Positions 33,029 through 64,000 of a DNA stretch of 64,000 nucleotides are shown here, piece by piece. Made by a program: the position numbers and the translations under genes. The notes under the pieces were generated by a model, which was given only the letters and a program-made list of their open reading frames with translations, ran no database searches and was not told where the DNA came from. How positions within the stretch are numbered: position 1 is the stretch's first letter; every line of letters starts with the position of its first letter. Origin of the DNA: Haliotis cracherodii. Taxonomy: Eukaryota. The stretch is from assembly GCF_022045235.1 (NCBI RefSeq), contig NW_027266275.1, positions 81,592,001 through 81,656,000 of the forward strand, given 5' to 3'.

Positions 33029-33116
33029 GAGTCGGAGTCTGCAGCAGAAGAGTCCAGTCCAAGTAGTGACCGCGGGTCCTTTGTGGACAGGACTGCACCT
33101 AAAGTAGAAGCTGAAG
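33029..33116 (+). CDS. ANK2: Ankyrin C-terminal region exon
   Basis: tctttcAG ... AAG|GTGAGG; ESESAAEESSPSSDRGSFVDRTAPKVEAE. Phase 0-1, linking to the downstream phase-1 exons. Confidence 0.85.
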
Positions 33117-33289
33117 GTGAGGGATAGTTGTGAAAGTAGTATCAGTTATGAATCTGTTCTGTGATGTGCTGCAATCATTACAAGAAGCCACTATGTTGAA
33201 ATGTCAGATATTTTGACGTGTTTGGATATCTGAATCTGTATAATTAGTTATTAAGTAGTGAAGTTTTTGAAACTTTATTTTGTTTTCAG

Positions 33290-33307
33290 TAGATGATTTT
33301 TCAAATA
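33290..33307 (+). CDS. ANK2: Candidate 18-nt microexon (VDDFSN); NAGNAG acceptor gives a 15-nt variant
   Basis: ttttgttttcAG|TAG acceptor, ATA|GTGAGT donor. Phase 1-1, no stop. Confidence 0.6.
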
Positions 33308-33653
33308 GTGAGTTTGCACTCTATTATTCATAGCCTTGTCCATAGCCGATATGCTTTTGAGACCTGGACTCAGTGACCTTTTGTCCCAAAGTTGTGTTTG
33401 TCTTTGCAAAAGGTTAATTATTAATAATCTTGTGTTATGGGTGTATAAAAATCATGAGTTGATCTCTGTAAAATCATTTGGATCAAGTTTTGAATCTAGA
33501 AAGAATTTATTAAATTTTTTATTTCAGTATGAACAAATATTTAACATTCTTCTCAGATTCGTCATATGGTGGCTTTGACTTTTGATTCCAGCATATAATT
33601 AAATGTTTGTTTGAATGAGTTTTATTTCAGCTGAATATTTTAGCTGTCTGCTG

Positions 33654-34704: not shown

Positions 34705-34905
34705 CAACTAGCTCCCGCCCGGAATCTATAGCGGAGGAACAGATTTTAGCCGATTTAGATGTCCGTAGGCCGCTAGCAAAGGCAGAGTCACCAGAGGAAA
34801 CGGCAGAAACCTCTCGTAAAAAGAAAGAGGCTTATATGAGCCTTGTTAGCGAAATGGATCGTCTTGCTGATGAGCAGGAAGCATTGGAAAAATCCAAGAG
34901 AGAAG
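34705..34905 (+). CDS. ANK2: Ankyrin tail cassette exon (201 nt)
   Basis: caatcAG ... AAG|GTATTC; ATSSRPESIAEEQILADLDVRR...AYMSLVSEMDRLADEQEALEKSKRE. Phase 1-1, open. Confidence 0.8.
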
Positions 34906-38123: not shown

Positions 38124-38294
38124 TAACAGAAGAGAGGCACAGTGTTTCCGAAGACACAATTGTCCGAGTAGCAAAAGGCAGCCCGGAAGACCCTATGCAA
38201 CGTGTCCAGCAGGCTCCAGCACAAGCGCCCTGTGTTGATATGGAACCCGAGCGCTCCCCCAGTGAAACCTCCATGGTTTACAAAGGAGACCAAG
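38124..38294 (+). CDS. ANK2: Ankyrin tail cassette exon (171 nt)
   Basis: gtctAG ... AAG|GTAGCC; VTEERHSVSEDTIVRVAKGSPEDP...SETSMVYKGDQ. Phase 1-1. Confidence 0.78.
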
Positions 38295-38784
38295 GTAGCC
38301 CAGTCACAGTTGTCTCCCCTGCACCATGCACTGGTTTCACAAACAACATTTGCCTCAGTTGAAAGTTGAATGTATTTCTGTTTTGGTTGTCGTTTTGTGC
38401 ATGTTTCATATGTGATTTTTCTATTAACTTGAGTTTATTTTGAGTTAACAATTCTTTTTTCAGAAGGGTCATTCGAGAAATTTGCAACATTTGTTTGCTG
38501 TGCAGTGTATTTTAAAATTACACATGACATACTGGTATTAATTCTATTCATCACACAAAACATGGAAATATATATTAACTTTAAGAGGCACTGTTAGTTA
38601 AAGAAGAACACATTCATATCATTTATATATTACTTATGATCTAATACTTCCCAATGTCTAATAACTTTCCATGAATTAAATTTTCACTGGTGAAGGTGAA
38701 TTTAGCCATAAGTCTTATAAAGTCAACATTTTACTGACACAAGCTCTGCACGTGTCCTCATATCATATTCAAACAAGCCTCTTA

Positions 38785-39527
38785 TGACTACACACACGTT
38801 CCACATGTCCGACACATATCACTGCACACAAGTTGCACGTGTCCGACACGTATCACTACACACAAGTTCCACATGTCCGACACATATCACTGCACACAAG
38901 TTGCACGTGTCCGACACGTATCACTACACACAAGTTCCACATGTCCGACACATATCACTACACACAAGTTCCACATGTCCGACACATATCACTGCACACA
39001 AGTTGCACGTGTCCGACATATCACTTCACACAAGTTCCACATGTCCGACACATGTCACTACACACAAGTTCCACGTGTCCGACACATCACTACACACAAG
39101 TTCCACGTGTCCGACACATATCACTACGCACAAGTTCCACATGTCTGACACATATCACTGCACACAAGTTCCACATGTCCGACACATATCACTACACACG
39201 AGTTCCACATGTCCGACACATATCACTACACACAAGTTCCACGTGTCCGACACATCACTACACACAAGTTCCACGTGTCCGACACATATCACTACACACA
39301 AGTTCCACATGTCTGACACGTATCACTACACACAAGTTCCACATGTCCGACACGTATCTCTGCACACAAGTCTCTTATCACTACACACAATTTCCACATG
39401 TCCGACACATGTCACTACACACAAGTTCCACATGTCCGACACATATCACTACACACAAGTTCCACATGTCCGACACATATCACTACACACAAGTTCCACG
39501 TGGCCGACATGTATCACTGCACACAAG
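38785..39527. repeat. About 32-bp minisatellite (acacaagttccacatgtccgacacatatcact), about 23 copies
   Basis: Directly visible. Confidence 0.95.
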
Positions 39528-40512: not shown

Positions 40513-40587
40513 ACCAGGGATATGCGGAGGATGAGGAAACCGTCAAGACCCCACCCCCCAGTCCTTCAGAAAAACAACCATTCACAG
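40513..40587 (+). CDS. ANK2: Ankyrin tail cassette exon (75 nt)
   Basis: cttccAG ... CAG|GTAGAC; DQGYAEDEETVKTPPPSPSEKQPFT. Phase 1-1. Confidence 0.8.
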
Positions 40588-43070: not shown

Positions 43071-43232
43071 CGGAGGAGCGCCATTTCGTAGAAGATGAGG
43101 AACATCATGATGAGGTCACAGAAATTGAGGAGATTTTCCAGATTTCTGAAGATGGGGAAACTTGGAAAACAATTCGTAAAGTGACCACCATAACACCACA
43201 GGGCACCTCTGAACGAACAGAGGTGATCAAAG
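43071..43232 (+). CDS. ANK2: Ankyrin tail cassette exon (162 nt)
   Basis: gatcAG ... AAG|GTAGCC; AEERHFVEDEEHHDEVTEIEEIFQISEDGETWKTIRKVTTITPQGTSERTEVIK. Phase 1-1. Confidence 0.82.
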
Positions 43233-44138: not shown

Positions 44139-44948
44139 CTGTGATATACTGTTATTCAGCTGCCAATATCCCCTACTATGTGATTTACTGTTATTCAGCT
44201 GCCAATATTACCTCCTATGTGATACACTATTATTCAGCTGCCAATATTACCTACTTTATGATATACTGTTATTCAGCTGCCAATATCCCCTACTGTGTGA
44301 TATGCTGTTATTCACCTGCCAATTTTACCTACTATGTGATATACTGTTATTCAGCTGCCAATATTACCTACTTTATGATATACTGTTATTCAGCTGCCAA
44401 TATCCCCTACTGTGATATGCTGTTATTCAGCTGCCAATATCCCCTAATGTGTGATATACTGTTATTCAGCTGCCAATATCCCCTACTGTGATATACTGTT
44501 ATTCAGCTGCCAATATCCCCTAATGTGTGATATACTGTTATTCAGCTGCCAATATCCCCTAATGTGAGATATACTGTTATTCAGCTGCCAATATCCCCTA
44601 ATGTGAGATATACTGTTATTCAGCTGCCAATATCCCCTAATGTGAGATATACTGTTATTCAGCTGCCAATATCCCCTAATGTGTGATATACTGTTATTCA
44701 GCTGCCAATATCCCCTAATGTGAGATATACTGTTATTCAGCTGCCAATATCCCCTACTGTGTGATATACTGTTATTCAGCTGCCAATATCCCCTACTATG
44801 TGATATACTGTTATTCAGCTGCCAATATCCCCTACTGTGTGATATACTGTTATTCAGCTGCCAATATCCCCTAATGTGTGATATACTGTTATTCAGCTGC
44901 CAATATCCCCTACTGTGTGATATACTGTTATTCAGCTGCCAATATCAC
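44139..44948. repeat. 39-bp minisatellite (gtgatatactgttattcagctgccaatatcccctactat), about 21 copies
   Basis: Directly visible. Confidence 0.95.
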
Positions 44949-45534
44949 CCGACTCTGTGATAGTTTCATACACAGTAATCCATTTTATTTCAGGTTTACA
45001 CCTTGCAGTTTGAACTGCCAACTGCACAACACCACTCACTGTGTCATGACTAAAATTAATGTGAATTTCCTTTTTTGATTGAGTTGTAATGATGAAAATG
45101 CTTTTTCCTTAAGTACTTGTTACAGATTTAGACATATTGTTGTATAAAAGTGAAGTTATTAGTAGTGATATAATTAAATAAATGTAAGGTGTCAGATTAC
45201 GCTAATTATGTAAGTTGAGAGAGCGGTTAAATTTAGATTTGTATTTCCCAAGGTTTATAGTTATTGTGATTAATGTTTAAGTAGTTTTTGTGCTTAAGTG
45301 ATGTACTGTCATAAGAACTGTAAATAATTAATGCTACTTTTTTTAGGAATAATATTACGGTACATGTTTTTTAATGTAAATACATTATGTTACATGTTTT
45401 TTAATGAAAATATAATTTTCGCTAAGAGATTGAAAGCCTCGGAAGAAAAAAAATAATATTTGAAGTAACTTAAACCTGGGTCAGATTGTCAAGAAGGCAC
45501 CAAACTCACACACAGATTTTCTTAAATGTTTCAG

Positions 45535-45629
45535 AAGAAAGAATAACTCCTTTCTCGAACGTTGAGCAAGCTGCTGCACGATTGGCTGCCGAGGCTGAAG
45601 GAGCTGACCAATCGGAGTCTGGTGTGTAG
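45535..45629 (+). CDS. ANK2: Ankyrin exon: probable alternative last coding exon (or 87-nt cassette ending 45621)
   Basis: gtttcAG acceptor, phase 1; EERITPFSNVEQAAARLAAEAEGADQSESGV* (TAG at 45627-45629). Weak internal donor CTG|GTGTGT. AATAAA at 47049. Confidence 0.7.
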
Positions 45630-47048
45630 TCGAATACTGTGTGCCTTGCCAATCCATGACAGGCTTTTGGGCCACATGATTAGCGCAGAGTGTAGCATAC
45701 AACAAGAGAACAATAGCCGATTATTATGTTTTAGCTATCCCTGAAGAATCTCATGAACAGAGAATTACTTAGAGGCTTCTGTATGTAGGATTCGGTTTTT
45801 GTCGAGATGGAGTTCTCTTTCTCAGCCCGCTCTAATGTAAGCAAGTTTTAAATGCGTAATTGTACATGTATTTGCTTGGCGGTTATTTCCAGGATATTTC
45901 AGCTTTGCATATTATTGCATGAGTTAAGAAACTGCGCGTATACTGTTTCCTGGACATCATGTTCAGCTAACAGACATAGGGTGTCAGGAAAGCATGGTTG
46001 GTTGAGCACTATTTTGCACCTGTCAAAAATGGTTTCATTTCACAGTTTTACACATGTGCATGGTTTTGATTGATTTCAATTATGCAAGAATATTTTCATA
46101 GTTATGATTGAACTATGGATATTGCGCTATATAATTTTATTTTCTCAATTCTGATATTGCTGATACGTGTTCGTAAGGTTATTGGGTTGGTGGAACCTGA
46201 GGAAGAAATCACTTTATGCATTGGCTCTGATTTGAATTTGACAACTGTTTGTGGAAATAACAAACAACTTACTAAATTACACTTGAAAGTGTCAGTGTTT
46301 CTTCCACAGGGTTGGATAAAATGAGATTCTTCAGACTTTGAGACAGGAGAAGCTTTTGCACTGAATTCAAAATTATTTATTATTTCATAATCCAAAGTAG
46401 ACAGTATTTATGGATAACAACTTCTTTAATTACTGTTTCGGTATAGATCCTTATTCCATTGTCAAGCAAGGATTTCATAATCCATTGAATCCTTTTTATT
46501 TAAGTTGATTCTTTTGTTTTCCTAAGTGTTGTTATACAGCTATACATGTTCGTTTGGCCGAGGGAGACCTTCGAAAAATGGCAAGCATTATTGATGTGAC
46601 ATCTTTTGTCAATAACGAAAAGTGCAATTTATATTCTCTTAGCTCATTGGATTTTACTTTCTTTGATATTTGTAATGTTATTTTAATGAGCAAGTGCAAT
46701 TTGTTGATTTTGATGAATATTTGCATATAAGGTTGTGACTTTTGATTGTTTTCATCTTAGTTGCTCTCAGCAGTGCTGATAAGAAAGCACGAGCTAGATA
46801 TAAGAAAATGATTTTGGGCATTAAGCAATCATTTCTAAATTTTAGAGTAAGAAGTTGAAATAATTTGTGTCACTTTAATTGTATTTAGTGTCTGTCCACT
46901 TTTAATTAACTTTTCCGCAAAAGAATTTCTTACATAATTTAGCTATTCATTACTCTTTAACATCTGCTTGATTTTCATATTTACATGATGTATAGCTTAT
47001 CTCACTGCCGTATTGCTTCGTCTATATTGTCATACTTTGTTGTCATTG

Positions 47049-47054
47049 AATAAA
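47049..47054 (+). promoter_or_regulatory. Putative polyadenylation signal for short isoform
   Basis: AATAAA followed by a GT/T-rich tract (ttggttgtggtattctttgtt), 1.4 kb after the stop at 45629. Confidence 0.45.
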
Positions 47055-48639: not shown

Positions 48640-51021
48640 AACAAGCTGAGTGGCTCAGGCAAAAAGAAGCCGAAGAACAGTCACGTCTTCAACGGCAGGA
48701 AGAGGAAGCTGAACTCCATAGAAAACAGGCTGAGTTGTATCGACAAGAGGCAGAGGAACGTGCACAACAACAACAGGTGGATGATGAGCGACGGAGGCAA
48801 GAGGCAGAAGCCGAGAAGCAAAGATTAGAAGATGACCGGTCAAGACAGCAAGAAATTGATGCAGAGAGATTGAAACAAGCAGAGTTAGATGCTGACAGGC
48901 TGAGGGACCAAGAGGCAGAAAGACTCCAGCAGAAAGAAGCTGAGCAGCTCCAGCAAGACGAAGCTGCTAGGTGCAGACAAAAAGATGCGGAGAAGGAAAA
49001 AGAGCTTGAAGAAGAAAAACAGCAGAGACTATTGAAAGAGCGAGATGATGATCTTGATGAAGTAGATAGGCTCCGCCAACAGAGGAAGGATGACGATGAC
49101 GATGAGATAGAGCGTCAGGAACTAGATCAACAGGAGAGACAGAGACAGCTTGAAACAGAGGATGATGGTGACCAGTACAGGCCACAGAAGGATCGAGCAG
49201 AGGATCGAGTCCGAGGTCCAGACTCAGAAACAAGAGTGGAGGCTGCCCACACCGACAAAGTTGCTAGCCTACCTCCAGGAGGGCCAATGTCTCTAGAACC
49301 TGAGCCTTATGGAGAAGCAGCAGAACAGATCATCAGTCCAACATCGGATGGATCATATCATGATGGACCATCCTCTGTCCCTGAGCCTCAAATGCCAGCA
49401 GGATTTGTTGCAGAAGACAGAGTAACTGACAAGGAATCTCCAATGTATGATTATGATCCAAGCTTTGATGAATTTGTTGACCATAGAGAAGAATACATAG
49501 TCGAGGAAACTGCTACTGAGAGGAAAGCAACCAGTCCTACCTACACAATTCCCTACAGTATCATAGGACAACCTGGTGTCACAGGAGAACAACCTGAGGT
49601 TGTTACCACTGGAAAACAGCCTGAGGTTGTTACCACTGGAAAAGAGCCTGGAGTCTTTGCCACTGAACAACAGCCTGGAGTCTCTGCCACTGAACAACAG
49701 CCTGGAGTCTCTGCGACCGAACAACAGCCTGGAGTCTCTGCCACTGAACAACAGCCTGGAGTCTCTGCCACTGAACAACAGCCTGGAGTCCCTGCGACCA
49801 AACAACAGCCTGGAGTCTCTGCCACTGAACAACAGCCTGGAGTCTTTGCCACTGAACAACAGCCTGGAGTCTTTGCAACTGAACAACTGCCTGGAGTCTC
49901 TGCAACCGAACAACAGCTTGGAGTCTCTGCAACCGAACAACAGCCTGGAGTCTCTGCGACCGAACAACAGCCTGGAGTCTTTGCGACCGAACAACAGCCT
50001 GGAGTCTCTATGACCAAACAACAGCCTGGAGTCTCCCCCACTGAACAACAGCCTGGAGTCTTTGCAACCGAACAACAGCCTGGAGTCTCTGCGACCGAAC
50101 AACAGCCTGGAGTCTTTGCGACCAAACAACAGCCTGGAGTCTCCCCCACTGAACAACTGCCTGGAGTCTTTGCAACCGAACAACAGCCTGGAGTCTCTGC
50201 AACCGCACAACAGCCTGGAGTCTCTGCGACCGAACAACAGCCTGGAGTCTTTGTGACCGAACAACAGCCTGGAGTCTCTGCGACCAAACAACAGCCTGGA
50301 GTCTCCCCCACTGAACAACAGCCTGGAGTCTTTGCAACAAAACACCAGCCTGGAGTCTTTGCAACCGAACAACAGCCTGGAGTCTTTGCAACCGAACAAC
50401 AGCCTGGAGTCTCTGCGACCGAACAACAGCCTGGAGTCTCTGCGACCAAACAACAGCCTGGAGTCTCCCCCACTGAACAACAGCCTGGAATCTTTGCAAC
50501 CGAACAGCAGCCCGGAGTCTCCCCCACTGAACAACAGCCTGGAGTCTCCCCCACTGAACAACAGCCTGGAGTCTCCCCCACTGAACAACAGCCTGGAGTC
50601 TTTGCAACTAAACAACAGCCTGGAGTCTCCCCAACTGAACAACAGCCTGGAGTCTTTGCAACCGAACAACAGCCTGGAGTCTTTGCCACAGGACCACAGT
50701 CTGATGTCATTACCATAGAACGACAGCATGGGGTCTTTGCAACAGGAGAACCTGATGTCACGGTTAAAGGACAAGAACCTAAGGTCGATGTAACAACAAA
50801 ACAGCCTGAGGTCACTTCCACAGGACAACAGCCCATATTTTCTGCCACAGGGCAGCATGACATGGAGGTCAAAGAACAACAGCCTCAGGCTGTTGTAACG
50901 GGAACACAACCTGAGCAGCTGTCAAGAAAGCCTGATGTTCTTACTGGTATGACAGGAGTCCAGCTGATAACCACCACCCAACAGTACTATGATGAAGAGG
51001 TATCAGGAGAATCTACTCAAG
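48640..51021 (+). CDS. ANK2: Ankyrin giant exon 1 (2382 nt): E/Q/R-rich coiled coil plus 9-aa repeat array
   Basis: Part of the 806-aa ORF 48609-51029. aatttcAG acceptor, AAG|GTACTT donor, phase 1-1, 794 codons. Confidence 0.88.
49647..50690 (+). repeat. Coding minisatellite, 27-nt unit (PGV[S/F][A/P]TEQQ), 39 copies
   Basis: First and last CCTGGAGTC at 49647 and 50673 are 38 x 27 nt apart; degenerate 9-aa units lie on both sides. Confidence 0.95.
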
Positions 51022-53338
51022 GTACTTAAACACTCTCAGTACTGACCAGAGTCAGCACTACCGGTACATAGTCACCAGGCACAATCAGAGATACTTACAT
51101 AGAATGCAATACAAGGCTTCCTATGGAAACGAGCACTCTATTCTCAAAAGTTGACAGTGATGACATAGGATGGATCGAACCACCATTTGGACACATGTAT
51201 CAATCCACACATTTTCAATAATCAAATAAAATAGCATATGTGCCATTTTGTCGTCACCTTCAGCTTTTGGAAGAAGTGTGGCTCATGTTTAGGCTACACA
51301 GGTTTATCTTATTAGTTCATGGCAGAAGGAAGGGTTTTGGGTGATATCTAACCCCTAACATGACATGTTTGTGTAAGCATATGTTTATGGCCGTACATCA
51401 TACTCCCTACAACTTGAGGACATATCTTGACCGTTGAGTTCCTCATTTCTGTAGCATGGGCCAAGCTGTTTGCATGCCAGTCATGTTTTGTTCATGCATT
51501 GTCATTATATATTTCCGTATGATCAACTTTGCCTTTGTTCATTTCCTCATCTGCATCATTCTCATATCACTTAAAACATGACATACATATGTCGCAACAC
51601 AGAGATAAAATCATTTCTGCGCATGGAATTATTTTAGGTTTCTTTATTTTTGTATCTGCAAATTTGAGTACAAAAACGTTTGTGGTACATTCATGATTTT
51701 TTTTAGATTTTACTCTCTTTTTTATATTGTACTCATGCAGTATGTTACATACACACACATAGTTTTGTTAAAAACTATTACAGTTATAATCAGTTTGAAT
51801 ATAACAAATTACAGCTTGTTGTGCTGTAAAGATATTGGAGTGTATATATTGTTATTTGACATCTGTCCAAACAAAACTTGATGAAAGAGCAAATTCATGT
51901 ATTTAATGGATACAATATCTGAAGGAAAATATAGCCTGGCCATGGCGATCACATGTTTAACTCTATGATATGCCAACAAGACATGTAATCTAGACACAAA
52001 GCTGAAAACAAGCCAACACCATAATGGACATTTGTGAAGAATAGGAAAGGTGGTTTCATCATCGGCAGGTAATTTTAAATTTTGAATTCTACCAAACCCT
52101 TACCAAGTGCTTCAAGCCTTAACCGTCCAAGCCTAAGACCAACTGCACCTTGTACTACCCAGGAATCCCTCACCTAACTATGGGATGACATGGGGCTTTA
52201 CAAACCATACAACCTACCTTGCTGAACATACTGTTGCCATTAACTGTGTAACTATTACATAGGACTTGACATTGTCATCAAAGAGTCTGATCATTTTGCA
52301 TCAGGTCTTAAAACAGGATTTACCATTTCAATCACAGAGATTTTGTATTTGGTAAATATGTTTGATTTTGATTTGATTTTGATTTTTTTACAGAGATCAA
52401 TACTGAAAAGTGTTGATTTGAATTATAGATTTCTAGTTTGCTGTTAGCTTGAGCTTGTTAACGTTGTAATTTTGATAAATGTATATTTGTTGATAATAAG
52501 TGATGTTTTGACTAGCAAGCACAACTGTTGTTGAAATGCTTCAGAATAGGCTTTTGCTTGAGAAGATGGTAAAAGAGTAAATTAAACACTGCCTCACAAT
52601 AAGATTTGCTAGAACAAAGTTCACCAAAGTTTGCATGCTTTGTGTATTTACTAACACTGTACATGCCATGTATTAGAGTAGAAGCCTGTAATTTTTTGCT
52701 GTTGTCACATTTGCTGCGGAGCTGTTGTCACATTTGCTGCGGAGATGGTTTTCACGTCTTCCGACTCTGCTTGTTGTTGTTTACCATCTGAGAGGTTACG
52801 CTACATAAATATACATTACTACTTGCACGACAAATTTCCGGTAATAAACAATTTATTTAAGAGGCTTTTACTCACGACAACAGCAAAGCAATGCTTTACT
52901 ACCTATACTTATATACTAAACCATTGAAATGAGGGATAGATTGAGTTTGACGCACTAACCAAGCTCATACCTGACCTGTATAATTGCCATGTACATGCTT
53001 TGCCTTGGTGATGGGACAATCCTCCTCAGGACCCAGCAATCCCCACCAATTCTCCCCCTTCCCAGTCTGTCCTCAGCACCCCAATAAACCAGGTGCCTGG
53101 TTCCCTCGGGTTTCCTCAGTTTCCCGCGGGTGTCTTTCAGCAGGGTTTGCGGTAGTTTGCTAACAGTGTGGTTTGTGCTGTAGTATTGGAATGACTCCCT
53201 GTAATGTATTGGACCTAGTGTAGACACTAGGAGTCTTCACTGTGTGTTGGCCAGCACGTGTGCAGTCGGCAGCTGCCATTGTTTGCGGTTTAGTCTAGTT
53301 ACTTGTTCTCACAATGCCCCACTTTCTCTGATTTCCAG

Positions 53339-54322
53339 TTTTCGATCAAGTTTTCGATCCTAGTCTGTCATCACAAGACACTATGTATGAGGAGGTTCTT
53401 CCTGATGGAACTAAGGTTAAGCATCGCAAGATCCATCACCAAGGTAAGAGTGTTGGAGCACGTGTGATGGAACTTGTGGAGTCTGAGGGACCTGCTCATG
53501 ACAGGGAAGAGGTACAGGAGTATGAGGAGGTCCTGCCAGATGGCACAGTACACCACACACATACGGTCAGAAAGCAATCTTTGAAGCATGTGACAAGGAC
53601 CCTGTCCGTAGACGAGGAGGAAAAGTCTCTTTACGATCGGGAAGTGGTTATTCCTGGTTCAAAAAGAGAAAACATGCTTGAGACTTTCGTTGCTCCTCCC
53701 ACATGTGTGACCGAGGAAGAGGAAGTTGAGCATGTGCTGCCTGATGGGAAGACGGTTAAGAGGCATGTCATAATGAACAGAATGGTGCACCACATCAAGA
53801 CCCATCAGCAGTCTTTTGATGAGGACTCGGGCACACTGGAGGAGGAAGACTATGAGATTGAAGAGGTTATCCCTGGGACCGTATCAGCTTTCATTGCTGG
53901 ACAAGATTCGGAGTCAGATGACGATGAACTGTCTGGCCAGATGATTGCCAACATGGCAGAATTTCAGGAGATCCTGGATGATGGGACGGTCGTTACAAAC
54001 AAACTCCTCATCAGTGAAGAAAAACGGACAGTCAGATCTAGGTCTGGGTCAATTGATGAGTCTGAGGAGTCTCGCAGAGTGGAAGAAGTTGCAGTGACGC
54101 CAAGTCCACATCCAGGTTCCTTTGTACAAGGAGAAGCCATACCTTACGATACCACAGGTCACGTGCCTGTCCAGACGAGAGAGAGAGTTGCCCATTTTGA
54201 GGAGTTTCGTCATGGTGGCATTGTAGAGGACACCCTGGAACTGAGGGAGGACTCGGAGAGGAAGGGAATTCTCCAGCAGAGGACTGTCCTGGATGATACT
54301 CCAGACAGCTTCGGGACACCAG
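53339..54322 (+). CDS. ANK2: Ankyrin large cassette exon (984 nt) with repeated EEVLPDGT motifs
   Basis: tctctgatttccAG acceptor, CAG|GTAATA donor. Phase 1-1, same frame as the 324-aa ORF at 53383. Confidence 0.87.
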
Positions 54323-56249
54323 GTAATACAGAGGTGCTGTGGAGCTCAGGGTCATAGGTACAGGGTAGATGGTAGCATTTCAGTTTGCTGTGGCCAGATG
54401 AAGCTGGTTGTCTGTTCCTTGTAGAGATTCAGCTTGAGAATGACATTTGCTTAGTTTTCACTTGCTTCAGAGTGATTCATCAATCAGGTATGGCTAGATT
54501 GGATGTGAAGATATGATTGTTGTATCTTAATGGCTGTGTTGGCTTTTGTTCCTAAAGTTCTTTGAGAACAGATCTGCGTCCTTGTGATGAAAAATATTCT
54601 GCTTATTATGAGGGCTTAAAATGGTTGGTGGCTCCTAGGGACATGTATCATGATATATCGCTGCTTAGTGGTGCTTCAGCGATTATCCATTGTCTTGTGA
54701 CAGAGTAACATTGACCTGTATGGCTTTGCAGTAGGATGTCTTCTATGGTTGTAGATGAGTTCAGATTATTATCCAGTATACAGTGAACACTATAGTGTCA
54801 AGCTATAGCACTGCATGTTGATTGTTGTAAACTGTTGTGAGGTTTGTGGGGAGACTACTTATCAACTAACACATTTGGTAAGGGTTGTATATAATGGTAT
54901 ATATCCTTGATGACAGGTATTATCAACTATGCTATATAGGACGAAGTAGGACATCTTTGATGTAAATTGTAAGTGTCAAAGTGATTATGATTTGATGTCA
55001 ACAAGTGTAGGTTTCTGAGGCTCACATTTGAAATATTAGCACACCTTTAAGAGACACAACACCATACACAATTATTGAAGACACTAGGGTTGAACATGAT
55101 AACAAATTTGCTGAAGAAATAGCATAATAAGTCAAAATTAGGGTATTTTGAAGATGAACATGTGCATGACGAGTTCTTGTGTTTAGTTGAATCTTCAATT
55201 TCACTCAACAGCTTCCATAGTAAGGTCTAGCATTCAATGCAGAGTGTTGTTTCTTGTTGGGTTTAGAGTGCCGTGAGTTGACTGACAGTGGCTTGGCTAA
55301 GCGGCAAGTTAAGAAGGTAACATGGCAACCAGACCATGTTGAGGTTGAAGGTGGGCAGAGCTTGTTTTCTGTGCATCTTGCGTGTGAAATGGCATGACCA
55401 TGCCAATATCCTAACAACTTGTTCAGTACCCATGAGAAGCAATTTCCTAACAACAGTTTATTGTTTGGTTCAAATGATACCACCAACTGACTCATTTTGT
55501 TGAACTTAACATGGCCGGAGTGATAGTCTTTGTGATATTTTCTTGGGCTAGAACAGTGTTTGAACAGATGGAGTGTATATGTATTTAGTTACAGCCATTC
55601 TATTGTCATGAGTTACGTAGAAGCATGGTAACATAGACTCACCTCTAACGAGTTCTGAGGGAAGCAGTTTCTCCTCAGGAAGATTTCCACCTTTGATTAA
55701 ATAGGGTTTACATGCTTATGATAGTTAATATAATGCCTCAGATTTACAGTCATTGAAAAAGCAACATAAACATTAGATTCGTTGTTTTTCAGTAATATTC
55801 ATAAAATATCAATAAAATGAACAATAAATTAGATAATAATACATGTAAAGACAACATCACACAAATACAAAGCACAACTGACTCCGACTTTCTTTGCTTG
55901 TGTCAAACATTAAGTTGTGATATGTTGAGTTTTTAAGACATTCTTTGCATGTGCTTGTCAGTATACTTGAAGAGGCATTAATTGTATATGTGTCTCTCTT
56001 CGTGTTTTTCCTCTTTATCTTGTGTGTGTTTAGCTTTAGATAGCCTTCTACCATTTGTCCCTAACCCCCATGAGTAATCCATAACATGTTCAGTTTACTA
56101 TCATAGACCAAAAACAGATTTAGAAAAATTGCAATTTTCAAAAATTTTGCCTGACGTTTGTTGCATCCCAGGGGAGTTGCCTTCGTCAGTAGATACGAAT
56201 TAAAAGACCGAGGGATTATCACCCTCCTTTGGTATTTTTGTTGTTTCAG

Positions 56250-56372
56250 CGAGTTTCGAGAATGGTGCGCCAGACACACCTGTCATTACCATTACGGAAG
56301 ATCTCAGCACCCCCCCTGATGAAGATGATTATATATCTTGCTACGGAATCGTACAAGAATCTGATTCGAAAG
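56250..56372 (+). CDS. ANK2: Ankyrin tail cassette exon (123 nt)
   Basis: tttttgttgtttcAG ... AAG|GTTAGC; ASFENGAPDTPVITITEDLSTPPDEDDYISCYGIVQESDSK. Phase 1-1. Confidence 0.8.
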
Positions 56373-58266
56373 GTTAGCGGAGACCCTACACCCTTGAGGA
56401 TGTGGATCTCAGTACTTTTGACTGTTTCAGAAATATGCAGCCTTTCTTTTAACTTTATCTGTTACAGAACTTTCTTTAACGATTTGGTTATGGGTAGTTT
56501 GATTTCCACTGTCTAGCACATTATCTTGTTTTGGGATTGGGTTATGTTTATGGGTATTATTTCGTAACTAACCAGCACTTCTTCAATGAGCACAGTCTTT
56601 TGTCCAATGGATTTGTATTGGGATAAATTGAGGAATTTTTTTTCTGCTAATTTTCTCAGCTTTCACAGTTAATGATTTCAACTCTTTGTGAATTTTATTG
56701 CAGGACACAAATTTCACACTTTCCTTACATTAAAGCCTCTTATTTTTCCTGCCAAATTTTTAGTTTTTAATTTTTTAACTAACATTTTAATTATGTATTG
56801 AAACTAACATTCTTTTTCTGAAGCAGTCAAAAGTTGTCAAAATGTCTGTATCTAATCAAAGCAAAAAGAAGCATTCAATTTTGCGAAAGAACTGCAAAAT
56901 AACTGTGTAGTCGAATGGGTGTATGGCACAGAACTCTCAGTGAATCTACCAATATGCATCCCCCAGGGGTGGTCTTGCAACATTTAGCTTACAGCTACTG
57001 CTTTTGCTGTCCTACATATATACCAGATTTTTCATGACCTGGTTCACATGGCAGTATTGTGTATTAAAGTGTCAAATTAGAAATTTGTGTGTATGAGAAG
57101 GTAACAATACAGTCGTAGCTAACATAGTATCATCATCAGTATGAATTATTAATTAACATTTTGAAAGGAGATTATTCAGGACCTCTTATAAAAACTCTTT
57201 TTGCTCTTCAGTATTTAAAATAATTCATGACGTAACCAATGCCAGCAAGATTTTTTGAAGATCTGATGCAACTGATGTTGTGAACCAGGGAAGAGTGTTG
57301 TTTAGCAGCAACCCTTACTTGCCGACTATTGCTGTGTAGATTTGAATTTTACAGTTTCATGCTTTTGTGTGGCATTATGCAGAATGCACATGTAAATGCT
57401 GATGGTTGTATATTGCATGCCAGTCAATCCAAGATTGCAATGGCTGCTTCTAAATTCTACTCCTGAATCAGGATGCATACTTTGACCACTACTACACCAT
57501 GACGGTTCTGATCTGGAACCAGAATGGCACAGAGGTATCAGAACTAGTTTCAGTGTGGAGCATCTGGATTGCATGGGACGGGGCTGCAAGAAATGTATTG
57601 CCATCTGTGTTGGACATTTTTGTTTATTGCTATTTTGAAATTTCGCTTTTTTATTCTTGTCTTTTACTTGAATGGTAGAATGCAGGTTCTACTGAATCGT
57701 GTGAAAACAATAGTGAATTAGGCAGATGTACACCCACTTCATTCTATGTCTGGAACATGTCGGCTGAATATGCACTCACAGACTACAGAGGCAATGTCCG
57801 GGAAATATTTGATTTGAGTAGCTAATCGCAAGATGTATCTCAATGGACTGCCATTACATAGCTGCCAATTGTTTAAAGTTTAGAGTTTAAAACAACAAAG
57901 TCTGCATCAGGAGCATAAGTTTAGACATTCTGCATACCTTTCCATTGAATAAAGGTATTACTAGGTGATATGTAATAATACTGTTGTACACTACACACAG
58001 TATTGTTTTAACAAACACTAATTTTGTCTCTTAAAATGAGGTAAACTTGTGTGCCAAAACATTTCAAACTTTTGGTAGCTATGTAATATTGTAAGATTGT
58101 CCAATAATTTTAATCTCAATATCTTATTGACATAATATAAAAACACTCTTTTCAAAATTGACAATTTCTTCAAAGAAAAAATTAAACCAATTTTAGGCCC
58201 CTGCCATTGCCTCGTCTTTTAGAATGCCTATGCATCTATCTAACATTTGAACATCTCTCAACCTAG

Positions 58267-58311
58267 GTGTGGAGGCGGCTCCCAGTGAGGAACCAAAGGC
58301 CCAAACAGAAG
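58267..58311 (+). CDS. ANK2: Ankyrin tail cassette exon (45 nt)
   Basis: CTAAC branch-like motif at 58240, acctAG acceptor, AAG|GTACCA donor; GVEAAPSEEPKAQTE. Phase 1-1; TGCATG at 58320. Confidence 0.75.
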
Positions 58312-59834
58312 GTACCATCTGCATGTTGTCAACACCTCAGTATGGTCTTGTTCTTTTCAGTATCCATTTATTTTGTACCCATGTTCAATGTAATCTGTAG
58401 AATAATCATACATTGTGGTTTTGCCTTCGTTTCAGGACCGTGGTCTTCCTTCATGTGTCGTGCACCCGTTATAGCACTGGTCACAGTCGTGGCCTTTAGT
58501 TGTCTGAAAAATGTTTCAGTAACTTTCAGTTGAAAAATGTCACAAATTTCATTAATCTAGTTTTCATGCATGGCCTGCTGGTCATATGAATTCAGAAATT
58601 GGAGGTAAGATCACCTGGGTGACTATTTCTCTTGAAAGGTCCTTGTGAACAGTTAGACAGTTTTAAAGATTATCCTTCTCCATGCAGTTCTAATGATTAA
58701 AAAATATCAATACGTTTCGTCTTAAAACTGTTAAAATTTTATCTAACACGTTTGAAAGATTTGAAAGATAAGGGACAGAGCCACACATAGTTTGCCTATT
58801 GTGCAATTGTTAATAGTTTTGATAGAATCCTGGTTTAGACCCCTGACATAGTTTGTGTTAGAACCAGTTCATCCTTTGGAAGCCAATTTACAACATTTAT
58901 AATCCTGTATTTTAATCCTGTTTAGCCATATTGTTTATCACCAAATGTGGTAATACATTACAGGAATGCCCAAGGCTTTCCTTATGTCACTGAACCAAAA
59001 CACAAATAGAACCATAGGTATACAGGTAGATGATGTCAACTTGTCTGTAAATGTTGCAAACTTTCAAAGAAAACCAGTCAAGATTTATGGGTATGGAAGA
59101 GAATAATGATGAACATGGCGGGTTGTTTGCTAAGATCCCCAGTATTTCAACTACAGCAGCAATGAGATTCAGACATTTTACCAATGATGAAGATCAAATC
59201 TAGGAAACGTTATGTTATTCCACCAATGAATTAAGTGGATTATTTCTCAGTTCTGATAAATTAATGTCATCACAATTGATTTTATCATCAAATATCCAAT
59301 AAATACCATAAAAGCATTTGAATTCTAAATGTGCTGCTTTTCAGAAGTACATAACTTGAACTGTGGACTGTTGAAATGGTTATGTCAGAATACTGTATAT
59401 AAAACAGTGCGATATTTTAGTTACGTTTGTGAATGATTGCAGCATTTTACTGGCAAAAGACTCTTAAAGTAAGATGGAAAATAAAAAGCCCAGAGAAAGC
59501 ATTAATTACTGCCCAGTTGAGATGTTTATATTCATATGACCAGTTAGACAACAGTACATCGTTGTTTTAGATTTCACTACAGATGACGCAATGTGTATCA
59601 GTAGATTCATTGTGAGTCAAGTCGTTACCAGTGTGTATTTAGTAAGACTTGTCCTGCAGATTTAAGTTTTTTCTTTTTCTGTCTCACTCTGTCATCTTTT
59701 ATAATAAGGAGTATATACTTGGATTATTTAGCGAAATTAATGTCCTGTCAGACAGCGATAGGTTCACTAACAATCCCATCCTCTGCTTCTTTTAATGCCT
59801 CCTTCCCTTGGATTGGCTATGGGATTGTGCGCAG

Positions 59835-62800
59835 CAGGTAAAGAGGTTTCAGAGAGCAAATATCAAGAGGAAGTAAGTGAGATTGTAACCAGGGAAACCT
59901 CAGAAACCGTTGCGTCTGCCGTCCATGTACACACAACAGAGGAAAGGATAGAAACTGTCAAAACAGAACATGTGTCTGAAACATATGAGGAGAAGGAGGA
60001 CCTTGGTGATACAGAGATCATTTCAAAGGAAAAGATTATTGTAACAGAAACTGAAAGGATTGTTGATGATGAAGTTTCAGAACCCGATGAAACTGAGGAG
60101 GGCAGAGCCGAAACTCCGACCAAGACCATTGAAGATGAGACATTTCCAACTCAAAAAACACCTGATGAACAGGAAGATATTCCTGATGAATGTATATCAG
60201 AAACCAAAGAGGATTCATTTGAATTCCAAAGGGACCAGAAAACTGTTTATGACTCTGAAGAACATATTTTGTCAGAGGAAACAACCAAAGAGATTTACAC
60301 TGAGGACCACAAAGAAGTTTTTGTGTCTGTTCAAAGGGACCATGTTGTTACTGAACAAGAGGAAGTGCATGAGGTGGTGGAGGAGAGGGAAGTGATAGTA
60401 CAAGATGAAGAAGAGCCTGTAAAGGAGGAGGTTGAACAAGAACTTTTGGAGGGAGTTGAAGGGGCAGAGAGAGGGCAGGAAGTAGATGATGCCACAGAAC
60501 TGTCTGAGCCTGTGAAACCAGAGGAGTATGTGGAGGAATTTGCACCAGCAGTGGAGCAAATTGAGGAGAGAGAGGAGGAGGTTGTCAAGGATATTGCACA
60601 ACAGGAACCTGAAAGGGTAACTATTGCTCAGGTTGTTAGTTTCGATGAGCAAGAGGACACATTCCACGAGGCAGAGGTTGAAGATGAGACAGTTTCAAAA
60701 GAACACGTTGTAGAGCAGATTGAGCAAGTAGACTTCAAAGATACCTTTGTAGAATCAGAAATTTCCAAAGATGAACAAGTTGTAGAGCAGATTGAGCAAG
60801 AAGAGTTCAAAGATACCTTTGTCGAATCAGAAATTACTGTTACTGATAAAGAGCCAGCTGAAGAACAGCTAGATATCAAGGAAATTGACAAGGTAGAGAC
60901 TGACATGGTCACAGCTGAGAAAGATGAATATGCTGAAAGTCAAGAAATTGAAGAATTCCAACAAGCTGAAGCTGAATTGGTTATCAAAGTTGAAGAACAA
61001 GAGAAACAAGTATTGGTAGAATATGATGAACAGGTAAAAGCTGAGAAAGTTGAGGAACAAGCTGAAGATAATGAAGAATTTGAACAAGCTGAAACTGAAT
61101 TGGTTAAAGAACAAACTGAAAGTCAAGACATTGAACAGGAAGTGTTGAAAGAAGTGGAGGAAACACATGTCCAGGAAGGGCAGGTTCAGTTTGAGGAATC
61201 TCAGCAGCAAGCTGCAACTGAAGTAGTCACTGAAGAAGTTTATGAACAAGTCGAGGACCATGTCCAGGAAACCTCGGAAAAGGTTCTGGAAGTAGAGATT
61301 GTGTCTGAAGATAGGGAAGAACCGAAAATGGCATCTGAGCAAGAGCTTGAGGAAATCTTTGAACAGGCAGTGGAAGAAGATGTCACATCTGAGCAACTAC
61401 AAGGACAGGAAGAGACTCAGCAGGAAGAGGCAACATTCCAAGGGACAGTAACAGAAACTGTATTAGCCGAGAAAATCTGTGAAGATACAGTTGATGTGAC
61501 AGAAACTGTTATAGACAAAGAAACTGAATTTGTTACTGTTGAAAAGGTTGAAGAAACAGTTACTGAGGAAGCTACCATTACTGAAACTGACAGATCAGAG
61601 GTGCAACTTGAGCAGGAGGCAGTTAAGAGTATTGAAAAGGAGGAGGAGATTTTACCAGAAACATCTGCAGTGGATGAGATTGAGGATACAATTGTTGAAC
61701 AAGCTCCCGACGAAACCGAGATTCTGAAAGAAGAGAAAATGGTTGAAGAACAACTTGAACAGCATGTAATTGAGCCAGTGTCATCAGAACGAGTAGTGGA
61801 AAGTGAAGTTTTGGATGTAAAGGATGATGTTGATGCTGTTATTGTCAAACAGGAGGAAAGTGAATCAGAAACGGAAGAAGCTGAGGCACCATCTGATACC
61901 CCGGAACTAATATTTGTGGACAAAGCGACCGAGGAGGTCGAGGTAGTAGAACAAGAAATGATACATGAATCTGACATGGAACCCGCTCATGTAACTATCG
62001 AATCCACTGAAGAAGTAACAACCCATTTAGTTGAGACTGAACAAGTTGATGAACAGGATGCCAAGATAACATCTGTTGAGCAGGAAGCCTCCAGAGAGAT
62101 AGTAGAGGAGACATTTGAAGTGGCAGTAGTAGAAACTGTTGATCAGGGAGTTTATGAAATACCAGAATCTTTCCCTAAAACTGATGAACGTGAAGCACCT
62201 ACAGTTGGAGCTGAAGAAACATTTGAGGAGGCAATGGCAGAAACCTTCACTTCTGAAAGACCAGAGGAAGAAATAACAAAGTTGGTAGAAGAAGAGAATG
62301 TTGAGACAATTACTTCTGTTGAACAACCAGAAGCCCACGAAGAAGTAGTTGAGGAGTTTGAGCTAGAAGCTGTTGTTACTGAAACAGTTGAGGAAGAAGT
62401 ACCGGAATCTTTCATGGATACAGTAGAACAAGAGAAGGCAGAGAGCATTGTTTCTGTTGAACAAGAACATCCAAGAGAAGCTATTGAGGAAACATTCGAA
62501 GAACCGGAAGCATACAAAGAAGTAGTTGAGGATGTTGAGCCAGAAGCTGTTGTTACTGAAACAGTTGAGGAAGAAGTACCAGAATCTTTCATGGATACAG
62601 TTGAACAAGAGAAGGCAGAGAGCATTGTTTCTGTTGAACATGAACGTCCACGAGAAGCTGTTGAGGAAACATTCGAAGAACCGGAAGCATACAAAGAAGT
62701 AGTTGAGGATGTTGAGCCAGAAGCTGTTGTTGCTGAATCAGTTGAGGAAGAAGCACCCGAATCTTTCATGGATACAGTAGAACCAAAGAAGGCAGAGAGC

Positions 62801-64000
62801 ATTGTTTCTGTTGAACAAGAACATCCAAGAGAAGTAATTGAGGAAACATTTGAAGAACCGGAAACATACAAAGAAGTAGTTGAGGATGTTGAGCCAGAAG
62901 CTGTTGTTGCTGAAACAGTTGAGGAAGAAGCACCCGAATCTTTCATGGATACAGTAGAACAAGAGAAGGCAGAGAGCATTGTTTCTGTTGAACAAGAACA
63001 TCCAAGAGAAGTAATTGAGGAAACATTTGAAGAACCGGAAGCATACAAAGAAGTAGTTGAGGATGTTGAGCCAGAAGCTGTTGTTACTGAAACAGTTGAG
63101 GAAGAAGTACCAGAATCTTTCATGGATACAGTTGAACAAGAGAAGGCAGAGAGCATTGTTTCTGTTGAACATGAACGTCCACGAGAAGCTATTGAGGAAA
63201 CATTCGAAGAACCGGAAGCATACAAAGAAGTAGTTGAGGATGTTGAGTCAGAAGCTGTTGTTGCTGAAACAGTTGAGGAGGAAGAAACACCCGAATCTTT
63301 CATGGATACAGTAGAACAAGAGAAGGCAGAGAGCATTGTTTCTGTTGAACAAGAACATCCAAGAGAAGCTATTGAGGAAACATTTGAAGAACCGGAAGCA
63401 TACAAAGAAGTAGTTGAGGAGGTTGTGCCAGAAGCTGTTGTTGCTGAAACAGTTGAGGAAGAAGCACCCGAATCTTTCATGGATACAGTAGAACAAGAGA
63501 AGGCAGAGAGCATTGTTTCTGTTGAACAAGAACATCCACGAGAAGTAATTGAGGAAACATTTGAAGAACCGGAAGCATACAAAGAAGGAGTTGAGGATGT
63601 TGAGTCAGAAGCTGTTGTTGCTGAATCAGTTGAGGAAGAAGTACCAGAATCTTTCATGGATACAGTAGAACAAGAGAAGGCAGAGAGCATTGTTTCTGTT
63701 GAACAAGAACATCCAAGAGAAGTAATTGAGGAAACATTTGAAGAACCGGAAGCATACAAAGAAGTAGTTGAGGATGTTGAGCCAGAAGCTGTTGTTACTG
63801 AAACAGTTGAGGAAGAAGTACCAGAATCTTTCATGGATACAGTTGAACAAGAGAAGGCAGAGAGCATTGTTTCTGTTGAACATGAACGTCCACGAGAAGC
63901 TATTGAGGAAACATTCGAAGAACCGGAAGCATACAAAGAAGTAGTTGAGGATGTTGAGCCAGAAGCTGTTGTTGCTGAAACAGTTGAGGAGGAAGAAACA
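59835..64000 (+). CDS. ANK2: Ankyrin giant exon 2 (>4.1 kb, 3' end outside window), Glu/Val/Thr-rich with 59-aa tandem repeats
   Basis: CACTAAC at 59765, pyrimidine tract, gcAG|CAG tandem acceptor (59835 or 59838), phase 1. GKEVSESKYQEEVSEIVTRE... reads in the same frame at the start, through the repeats and at base 64000 with no stop seen. Confidence 0.9.
62366..64000 (+). repeat. Coding tandem repeat, 177-nt (59-aa) unit, 9 full copies plus start of a 10th
   Basis: GAAGCTGTTGTT at 62366, 62543, 62720, 62897, 63074, 63251, 63431, 63608, 63785, 63962. Confidence 0.96.

What the first reader, a model, noticed from the sequence alone, without database searches (positions are those of the whole stretch)
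33029..64000. Combinatorial ankyrin tail built from about 10 symmetric phase-1 cassette exons plus alternative ends
Seen: every exon I can read after 33116 starts in phase 1 and, where its end is visible, ends in phase 1 with a length divisible by 3. These are 33290 (18 nt), 34705 (201), 38124 (171), 40513 (75), 43071 (162), 45535 (87), 48640 (2382), 53339 (984), 56250 (123) and 58267 (45), then 59835 (>4.1 kb). The ZU5/UPA exons upstream have mixed phases. Inference: any subset can be spliced in frame. One invertebrate gene could then make hundreds of tails from tens to thousands of residues, doing by splicing what vertebrates do with three ANK genes.
Basis: partly seen in the sequence, partly recalled or inferred. 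Interest (0 to 1): 0.8.

Follow-up and report, generated by a model that had tools for sequence, protein, structure and literature searches.

The report
Alternatively spliced same-phase ankyrin tail
The tail of a snail-like mollusc's single ankyrin gene is built from a long run of exons that all keep the same reading-frame phase and are joined in several different ways in RNA, an ordinary though unusually tidy case of the giant, many-isoform ankyrins already known in invertebrates.

Summary
All 10 claimed exons have AG/GT borders, a length divisible by 3 and an open phase-1 frame. Upstream ZU5/UPA introns have mixed phases. That criterion alone is not above chance for small exons: 1,287 pseudo-exons fit it in 27,996 intron bases. 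Independent support is strong for 8 of the 11 listed exons, weak for 38124 and 45535, and absent for the 18-nt 33290.

The last exon runs to about 69287 (9.45 kb). Beyond the window come four more phase 1-1 exons, one of them 7.95 kb, and then a conserved C-terminus that breaks the pattern.

RNA contigs of 4 runs show alternative joints: 54322 to 55267, to 59838, and to a C-terminal exon 29 kb away; 51021 to 58267; and 58311 to an exon 12 kb away. No joint touched 56250-56372.

Cassette use is therefore real for the downstream half. "Any subset, hundreds of tails" is untested. RefSeq models already list 40-50 ankyrin isoforms in other molluscs, and giant mollusc ankyrins are published (PMC5135030). 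All earlier scan notes were on this same window. Verdict: new member of a known kind.

The parts
27947..28991 (+). Three death-domain / post-death-domain exons (27947-28150, 28462-28590, 28894-28991). The first two are already phase 1-1; the third goes from phase 1 to phase 0.
   Evidence: Spliced fit to Pomacea P0139, lengths, 70-82% identity to relatives. The Death domain Pfam hit is on the Arion homologue P0081.
33029..33116 (+). E0, the first tail exon (88 nt, phase 0 to 1). It sets the phase-1 register.
   Evidence: Homology z 10.8-14.1 in 4 of 7 mollusc tails.
33290..33307 (+). E1, candidate 18-nt micro-exon (phase 1-1), unverified.
   Evidence: AG/GT and open frame. It is the only called exon to pass the strict splice filter, against 0 intronic decoys. 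No homology. No RNA was laid here.
34705..34905 (+). E2, 201 nt, phase 1-1, conserved module.
   Evidence: tblastn E 1e-11 to 2e-5 in 5 of 12 relatives. z 18-25 in the four best of 7 tails. The homologous 65-aa block is optional in Pomacea isoforms.
38124..38294 (+). E3, 171 nt, phase 1-1.
   Evidence: Only weak homology, in the right order (z 1.6-1.9; the TEER..IVR.AK.SPE pattern directly follows the E2 homologue in Nucella and Babylonia). The homologous 38-aa block is optional in Pomacea.
40513..40587 (+). E4, 75 nt, phase 1-1, TPPPSP module.
   Evidence: z 7-12. The homologous 19-aa block is optional in Saccostrea (absent in 2 of 15) and in Octopus (present in 8 of 33).
43071..43232 (+). 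E5, 162 nt, phase 1-1, 'DG.TWKT' module.
   Evidence: z 14-21. tblastn E 1e-10. Optional in Saccostrea (absent in 1 of 15) and in Pomacea.
45535..45621 (+). E6, 87 nt, phase 1-1. Reading through its donor gives ..SES-GV-stop, and an AATAAA lies at 47049 (possible short end).
   Evidence: Weak homology in the right order (z 2.1-2.4). Arion transcript protein P0080 ends ..SDTGV right after the homologous block.
48640..51021 (+). E7, 2,382-nt long exon, phase 1-1: a coiled-coil-like acidic/basic start, a conserved SPVPEP patch, and 39 copies of a 27-nt repeat.
   Evidence: Partial homology. Its donor 51021 is joined to 58267 in an RNA contig of X1.
53339..54322 (+). E8, 984 nt, phase 1-1, the best conserved tail module (EEVLPDGT motifs).
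   Evidence: Its donor is joined to 55267 (X1), to 59838 (X2) and to the C-terminal exon E14 (X1, X4, X13). It is skipped in the 51021>58267 joint.
55267..55350 (+).
   Evidence: z 9.2-10.3 in 3 of 7 tails. Joint 54322>55267, and a loose end from 55350 to an exon at about 80357 in window numbering. The homologue is a 28-aa cassette in Arion and a 39-aa cassette in Saccostrea.
56250..56372 (+). E9, 123 nt, phase 1-1, conserved ITITED module. No inclusion was seen in the 4 runs.
   Evidence: z 10-20 in 4 of 7 tails. 79% identity to Pomacea. No joint and no rise in depth.
58267..58311 (+). E10, 45 nt, phase 1-1, RNA-supported, no homologue found.
   Evidence: Loose ends on both sides in X1: 51021>58267 and 58311>70758 in window numbering. 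No homology.
59835..64000 (+). E11, giant acidic exon. It runs on to 69287 beyond the window (9,450-9,453 nt) and holds a 177-nt repeat array from 62319.
   Evidence: Joint 54322>59838 in X2, and exon-level depth in X1 and X2 only.

Best explanation
This is the 3' half of the only canonical ankyrin gene found in this mollusc assembly. After the death domain, one exon (33029-33116) puts the reading frame into phase 1.

From there, over about 50 kb, at least 15 and probably 16 consecutive exons begin and end in phase 1. Twelve lie in the window and four beyond it. Three of them are long exons of 2.4, 9.45 and 7.95 kb. A 67-nt exon (phase 1 to 2) and a conserved last exon then close the protein.

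Because every one of these exons is frame-neutral, the spliceosome can join any earlier donor to any later acceptor and still reach the conserved C-terminus. RNA contigs show that it does so at several nodes. They give a short tail (53339 exon straight to the C-terminal exons), a medium tail (through 55267 and a 45-nt exon at 80.36 kb), a giant tail (into the 9.45-kb exon), and a path that skips the 53339 exon altogether.

Shown here: the phases, the joints, the conservation of most modules, and their optional use in relatives.

Inferred: that the modules are disordered acidic spacers or short binding motifs; that tissue, and above all neurons, decides the choice; and that the uniform phase arose because optional exons that lie between the same flanking constitutive exons must all share that intron's phase to be tolerated.
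For: Gene identity:
- ZU5 and UPA Pfam hits.
- 64-89% identity of the ZU5-UPA-death-domain exons to mollusc ankyrin-2-like proteins.
- The UPA exon and the 53339 exon each match only this locus in the 1.18-Gb assembly.

Phases and lengths.

Downstream exons and C-terminus. The C-terminal exon E14 was predicted from homology before loose ends in 3 of 4 runs landed on it.

Alternative joints, all GT..AG (targets placed):
- 54322>55267 (X1)
- 54322>59838 (X2)
- 54322>83433 (X1, X4, X13)
- 55350>80357 (X1)
- 51021>58267 (X1)
- 58311>70758 (X1)

The runs are RNA: exon bins have depth 18-585 and intron bins 0-17.

Conservation of modules.

Optional use of homologous blocks in relatives:
- Saccostrea, 15 isoforms.
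- Pomacea, 19 isoforms.
- Octopus, 33 isoforms, with 6 of 8 possible combinations of 3 tail blocks.
- Arion transcript proteins.

Composition: tail exons are 67-93% disorder-promoting residues with D+E of 18-57%. No Pfam family was found in any tail piece scanned.
Against: - Only 6 kb (54000-59999) was laid on RNA, so no joint of this species is known for 33290 through the 48640 acceptor.
- 56250-56372 showed neither a joint nor extra depth in 4 of 4 runs.
- Each joint rests on one contig per run, and contigs cannot give proportions or show which choices occur on the same molecule.
- The runs are labelled RNA only as a guess, and their tissues are hidden.
- The isoform sets of relatives are mostly automatic gene models, not cloned cDNAs.
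- Disorder is inferred from composition only.
Confidence: 0.8

Rival explanations
1. Fully combinatorial tail. Each of the roughly 16 modules is included or skipped independently, so that hundreds of distinct tails coexist and act as a cell-type code.
For: All modules share phase 1-1. 16 of the 17 phase-1 donors that precede a phase-1 acceptor (E0 to E13b) end in G, so the junction codon is G plus the first two bases of the next module, whichever donor is used. Long-range joints of 12-29 kb occur. Octopus models show 6 of 8 combinations of 3 tail blocks. Pomacea models show homologues of the 34705 and 38124 exons absent separately and together.
Against: Independence was not tested. The joints seen can be read as four chains. 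56250 was never seen included.
Confidence: 0.2
2. A small fixed repertoire. There are three to six tails (short, medium, giant, and a truncated -SGV end) built from coordinated blocks. The uniform phase is a passive by-product of new exons having arisen inside one ancestral phase-1 intron, not a device for diversity.
For: The joints sort into few paths. 54322>83433 is seen in 3 of 4 runs, the others in one run each. Any optional exon between the same two constitutive exons must be symmetric in that intron's phase to be tolerated (inference). Symmetric exons, disorder and alternative splicing go together in general (PMC3632108, passages).
Against: Homologous small modules are optional one by one in three other molluscs. 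Only 6 kb of this locus was tested.
Confidence: 0.35
3. Constitutive tail. All exons are normally included, and the symmetric phases are coincidence.
For: None beyond the open frames.
Against: 54322>83433 skips eight exons in 3 of 4 runs. 51021>58267 skips the 984-nt exon (call 53339). X4 and X13 have only intron-level depth on the 9.45-kb exon (all).
Confidence: 0.02

Closest known systems
Drosophila Ank2 and C. elegans unc-44 giant ankyrins
   Same: One invertebrate ankyrin gene. Long exons lie downstream of the death domain and are included by alternative splicing. Repeat arrays sit inside the long exons (PMC5135030, introduction passages and section 8).
   Different: Here there are three long exons (2.4, 9.45 and 7.95 kb) interleaved with at least 12 small modules of the same phase. 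Exon phases of the fly and worm genes were not examined here. The isoform names for those genes are recalled, not taken from a call.
Mollusc giant ankyrins in Jegla et al. 2016 (PMC5135030)
   Same: The paper reports giant ankyrins in molluscs and two non-homologous long exons in Aplysia ankyrin, positioned after the death domain (section 8).
   Different: The text I read says nothing on exon phase, small cassettes or RNA joints. Its tables S2 and S4 (sequences, exon lengths) are supplements that I could not open and may overlap with the exon sizes given here.
RefSeq/Gnomon isoform sets of 'ankyrin-2-like' genes of other molluscs and arthropods
   Same: Isoform numbers reach X40-X50 in Mytilus, Crassostrea, Octopus, Pomacea, Babylonia, Biomphalaria and Scylla. 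Homologues of the 34705, 38124, 40513, 43071, 48640, 53339 and 55267 exons are optional blocks.
   Different: These are automatic models of other species. This species has no protein in the searched collection. The models carry no statement about phase.
Vertebrate ANK2/ANK3 giant exon and spliced C-terminal regulatory domain
   Same: A giant neuron-type exon plus many splice variants in the C-terminal domain. Mouse Ank3 has 28 novel splicing events in heart, 6 of them in the C-terminal domain (PMC4449188, passages).
   Different: The vertebrate giant exon lies before the death domain (PMC5135030). No vertebrate sequence was compared here.
General rule: symmetric exons encode disordered, alternatively spliced modules (Schad et al. 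2013, PMC3632108)
   Same: A run of successive same-phase symmetric exons coding low-complexity acidic sequence that is alternatively spliced (passages).
   Different: That study is on the human genome and is statistical. This locus is one extreme example: 17 consecutive phase-1 introns.

Membership tests
Canonical ankyrin (ANK repeats - ZU5 - ZU5 - UPA - death domain) | ZU5 and UPA domains | tested here: met
   Pfam ZU5 at E 1.1e-19 (7168-7425) and UPA_2 at E 4.7e-22 (25394-25855).
Canonical ankyrin (ANK repeats - ZU5 - ZU5 - UPA - death domain) | Death domain after UPA | tested here: met
   Exons 27947-28150 and 28462-28590 align at 70-79% identity to the death-domain part of P0139 and P0036. 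The Arion homologue P0081 scores Pfam Death at E 1.8e-15. A raw ORF piece of the window (28422-28697) gave no Pfam hit on its own.
Canonical ankyrin (ANK repeats - ZU5 - ZU5 - UPA - death domain) | N-terminal ankyrin repeats | not tested
   They would lie upstream of the window, which was not fetched.
Giant ankyrin of the protostome type (long exon after the death domain; PMC5135030) | Unbroken ORF of several kb inside the gene, downstream of the death domain | tested here: met
   48640-51021 (2,382 nt), 59835/59838-69287 (9.45 kb) and 71328-79277 in window numbering (7,950 nt).
Giant ankyrin of the protostome type (long exon after the death domain; PMC5135030) | The long exon is spliced to ordinary ankyrin exons in RNA | tested here: met
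   Joint 54322>59838 in X2 and joint 51021>58267 in X1. This was not tested for the 7.95-kb exon.
Giant ankyrin of the protostome type (long exon after the death domain; PMC5135030) | Neuron-enriched expression of the giant form | not testable with these tools
   The tissues of runs X1-X22 are hidden. Exon-level depth on the giant exon appears in X1 and X2 only.
Cassette exons (frame-preserving, both included and skipped) | Length divisible by 3 with equal phase at both ends | tested here: met
   16 of 16 exons from 33290 to 80401 in window numbering.
Cassette exons (frame-preserving, both included and skipped) | Inclusion and skipping joints both seen in the same species | tested here: inconclusive
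   Met for 53339, 55267, 58267 and the 9.45-kb exon. 56250 was seen only skipped.
Independent combinatorial splicing (many cassettes chosen independently on one transcript) | Statistical independence of the choices on single molecules | not testable with these tools
   Only assembled contigs were available, and they break at branch points.

The most novel reading that the evidence does not exclude
The whole 55-kb region after the death domain is a conserved 'splice grammar'. About 16 modules are all in phase 1. Of the 17 phase-1 donors that precede a phase-1 acceptor (E0 to E13b), 16 end in G, so each module brings its own first residue whichever donor it is joined to. The modules are joined over distances of up to 29 kb. 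Much of the module set (homologues of the 34705, 40513, 43071, 53339, 55267 and 56250 exons, the 70758 exon and the 7.95-kb exon) is shared among gastropods and partly with bivalves and cephalopods. If the choices are independent, one gene yields hundreds of tails from about 100 to about 7,500 residues, a cell-type code for the membrane skeleton comparable in logic to other famous combinatorial genes.
Probability: 0.2. Interest if true: 0.6.

Novelty: new member of a known kind. Interest (0 to 1): 0.4.

Why it matters
Ankyrins tie ion channels and adhesion molecules to the spectrin skeleton, and their giant isoforms organise axons. The locus gives a clean, complete map of how one mollusc gene can produce short, medium and giant tails. 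All optional exons share one phase, and a conserved C-terminus is reachable from any of them.

That makes isoform-specific probes, knock-outs of single modules, and cross-phylum comparison of modules straightforward to design. The 53339, 55267 and 56250 modules are conserved among gastropods and in bivalves.

It does not change what is known about ankyrins. Many-isoform and giant invertebrate ankyrins are already on record.

Tried and rejected
Only in-frame optional blocks in protein isoforms were available.

2. Finding this species' own annotated or transcript-derived proteins. Three word-index searches and one full HMMER search gave only P0001, a 324-aa genomic-style ORF at 98% identity. No row was marked as the window's own. 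The best relative in the ZU5-death-domain part was Pomacea at 81%.

3. Pfam on tail pieces gave no family.

4. Looking for the penultimate exon with simple motif patterns failed. A donor-plus-composition scan found it at 83433-83499 in window numbering, and RNA loose ends later confirmed it.

5. Weak splice donors as a mark of cassettes, rejected. By my own reading of the donor strings, 4 of 18 tail donors fit GTRAG and 2 of 11 upstream donors do, so there is no contrast.

6. Homology for the 18-nt and 45-nt exons: none above shuffles. No further conserved block outside the called exons at E < 0.5 with 12 relatives.

7. Literature. 'ankyrin-2' with 'intron phase' gave 0 papers. None of the 12 papers listed holds 'giant ankyrin'. 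Searches gave no paper on exon phase in ankyrin tails or on mollusc ankyrin splicing. The library lacks most subscription journals, so this is not proof of absence.

8. Papers seen:
- PMC5135030: passages and all of section 8. Its supplements were not seen.
- PMC3632108: passages.
- PMC4449188: passages.
- All other titles: search listings only.

Full report
WHAT THE LOCUS IS

The + strand of the window carries the 3' half of an ankyrin gene.
- Pfam finds ZU5 (7168-7425, E 1.1e-19) and UPA_2 (25394-25855, E 4.7e-22).
- The ZU5, UPA and death-domain exons align at 64-89% identity to 'ankyrin-2-like' proteins of Mytilus, Saccostrea, Crassostrea and Pomacea.
- The nearest relative in the searched collection is Pomacea, at 81% over 641 aligned residues. 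No protein of this species itself is in the collection.
- The window is G000:C12:81592001-81656000 of a 1.18-Gb assembly.
- The UPA exon and the 53339 exon each match only this locus in that assembly. By this test there is one canonical ankyrin gene.

CHECK OF THE OBSERVATION

All 10 claimed exons have AG before and GT after, the stated lengths, and no stop in the frame that begins two bases in, which means phase 1 at both ends.

A fit of the upstream exons to Pomacea P0139 gives intron phases 2,1,0,1,2,0,0,1,1,1. The next intron (28991|33029) is phase 0, and 33029-33116 goes from phase 0 to phase 1. 'Mixed upstream, uniform downstream' is therefore correct, although the two death-domain exons are already phase 1-1.

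Is this more than chance? For the long exons it is, because of the ORF length. For the small exons the stated criterion is not enough:
- 1,287 AG..GT stretches of 15-300 nt in the 27,996 intron bases are also open in phase 1 and divisible by 3.
- A strict filter (11 or more of 14 pyrimidines, Y at -3, GTRAG donor) leaves 0 decoys. It also passes only one called exon, the 18-nt 33290.

The small exons therefore stand or fall on other evidence.

INDEPENDENT EVIDENCE FOR THE EXONS

Peptides of single exons were compared with the tails of other molluscs' ankyrins, against shuffled controls, and by tblastn with 12 relatives.

Clear homologues in the right order:
- 33029: z 10.8-14.1
- 34705: z 18-25; E down to 1e-11
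- 40513: z 7-12
- 43071: z 14-21
- 53339: E down to 2e-40
- 56250: z 10-20; 79% identity to Pomacea

The exon 53339 also has 52 relatives at E of 0.001 or better among 1.84 billion representatives.

The exons 38124 and 45535 have only weak scores (z 1.6-2.4), but the matches lie exactly where expected. The exons 33290 and 58267 have none.

1. A conserved 84-nt exon at 55267-55350, also phase 1-1. It scores z 9.2-10.3 in 3 of 7 tails.

2. The gene does not end near the window. I fetched 39 kb downstream. The open frame of the last exon runs to 69292, with a donor after 69287. After it come, in window numbering:
- 69600-70052 (453 nt)
- 70758-70844 (87 nt)
- 71328-79277 (7,950 nt, the part best conserved among gastropods; E 1e-133 to Patella)
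- 80357-80401 (45 nt)
- 83433-83499 (67 nt, phase 1 to 2)
- a last exon from 86513 to the stop at 86711, which carries the conserved ankyrin C-terminus

The run of phase-1 introns is therefore 17 long, or 16 without the unverified micro-exon. If phases were independent with probability about 1/3, that would be about 2e-8 (my arithmetic). They are probably not independent; see the section on how it most likely works.

Of the 17 phase-1 donors that precede a phase-1 acceptor (E0 to E13b), 16 end in G. The junction codon is therefore G plus the first two bases of whichever module follows.

RNA EVIDENCE

I laid four of them (X1, X2, X4, X13; four studies) on 54000-59999, the richest 6 kb: four introns and eight splice sites. 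All four are assembled contigs. Exon bins reach depth 18-585 against 0-17 in introns, so they behave as RNA with some unspliced background.

Joints and loose ends, all with GT..AG borders:
- 54322>55267 (X1)
- 54322>59838 (X2). Seven letters are shared by both sides, and only this cut is GT..AG, so the acceptor used is the second AG of a CAGCAG pair.
- 54322>83433 (X1, X4, X13). This lands on the C-terminal exon that I had predicted from homology beforehand.
- 55350>80357 (X1)
- 51021>58267 (X1)
- 58311>70758 (X1). The target was found by pattern search and turned out to be a conserved module (z 7-15).

Against the claim:
- No joint and no rise in depth at 56250-56372 in any of the 4 runs.
- No 58311>59835 joint and no 56372>58267 joint.
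- Each joint rests on one contig per run.
- Contigs give neither proportions nor linkage between choices.

RELATIVES

Names come from the sources. Automatic RefSeq models number ankyrin isoforms up to:
- X47-X49 in Mytilus
- X43 in Crassostrea virginica and Octopus bimaculoides
- X45 in Pomacea
- X48 in Biomphalaria
- X50 in the crab Scylla

Aligning isoforms within a species shows optional blocks homologous to this window's modules:
- Saccostrea, 15 isoforms of a cluster of 29. The 40513-like block is absent in 2, the 43071-like in 1, the 53339-like in 2 and the 55267-like in 3.
- Pomacea, 19 isoforms: 15 of the 40 in the cluster plus 4 others. The 34705-, 38124-, 43071-, 48640- and 53339-like blocks are each optional, in differing combinations.
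- Octopus, 33 short isoforms. There are 3 tail blocks with 6 of 8 combinations. There are also 7 optional blocks in the linker before ZU5, so splicing diversity is not confined to the tail.
- Arion, three transcript-derived proteins. They differ by a 28-aa block homologous to 55267-55350. One ends ..SDTGV just after the 45535 homologue, matching the ..SES-GV-stop read-through in the window with an AATAAA at 47049.

HOW IT MOST LIKELY WORKS

After the death domain the gene offers a chain of frame-neutral modules. They are acidic and low in hydrophobic residues and contain no Pfam family.

Splice-site choice decides how many modules stand between the spectrin-binding and death-domain core and the conserved C-terminus, or whether the protein stops early.

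The uniform phase is best read as a constraint. An optional exon that lies between the same constitutive neighbours is tolerated only if it is symmetric in that intron's phase, so every exon added to the tail had to be 1-1. This part is inference. The general link between symmetric exons, disorder and alternative splicing is published for human genes (PMC3632108, passages).

COMPARISON AND NOVELTY

Giant ankyrins with long exons after the death domain are described for Drosophila, C. elegans and many other bilaterians, molluscs included. Aplysia is reported to have two non-homologous long exons (PMC5135030, section 8 and passages). Vertebrate ANK3 is also richly spliced in its C-terminal domain (PMC4449188, passages).

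What seems not to be in print is the strict phase-1 register of the whole tail and the long-range joints. This holds only as far as five searches of this library can show.

I file it as a new member of a known kind, of moderate interest.

LIMITS

- Only one 6-kb stretch could be laid on RNA.

Noticed in passing
Inside it, an AAG|GTAACA looks like a strong alternative donor, which would shift the frame.
   Followed up: partly
window 59831-59840: Tandem CAGCAG acceptor at the start of the giant exon. The one RNA joint fits the second AG (start 59838). Using the first AG would add one alanine.
   Followed up: partly
window 45622-47090: Reading through the donor of the 45535 exon gives ..SES-GV-stop, with an AATAAA at 47049. 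An Arion transcript protein (P0080) ends ..SDTGV at the same place, so a short PDZ-ligand-like end may be conserved in gastropods.
   Followed up: partly
window 30060-30873, 38783-39527, 44140-44962: Three long intronic tandem arrays (16-nt x 51, 34-nt x 17-22, 39-nt x 21) that create long spurious ORFs on the + strand.
   Followed up: no
proteins P0026 (2,706 aa) and P0028 (1,900 aa): Unnamed proteins from other assemblies that match the 53339-exon module in 20 and 16 separate stretches. These are proteins built of many copies of this module. Their organism and gene are unknown.
   Followed up: no
runs X1 versus X2, X4, X13: X1 contigs are identical to the assembly apart from one letter. X2, X4 and X13, which carry other organism labels, differ by about 1.5-2% in introns and show small indels. 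This points to strong polymorphism or closely related taxa under different names.
   Followed up: no
Octopus and Pomacea isoforms: The linker between the ankyrin repeats and the first ZU5 domain also carries many optional blocks: 7 blocks with 14 combinations in 33 Octopus isoforms. The tail is not the only variable region of mollusc ankyrins.
   Followed up: partly
window 27947-28150 and 28462-28590: The two death-domain exons are themselves phase 1-1 (204 and 129 nt), so skipping them would also keep the frame.
   Followed up: no
window 8949-9177: Run of 229 N inside the intron after the first ZU5 exon.
   Followed up: no
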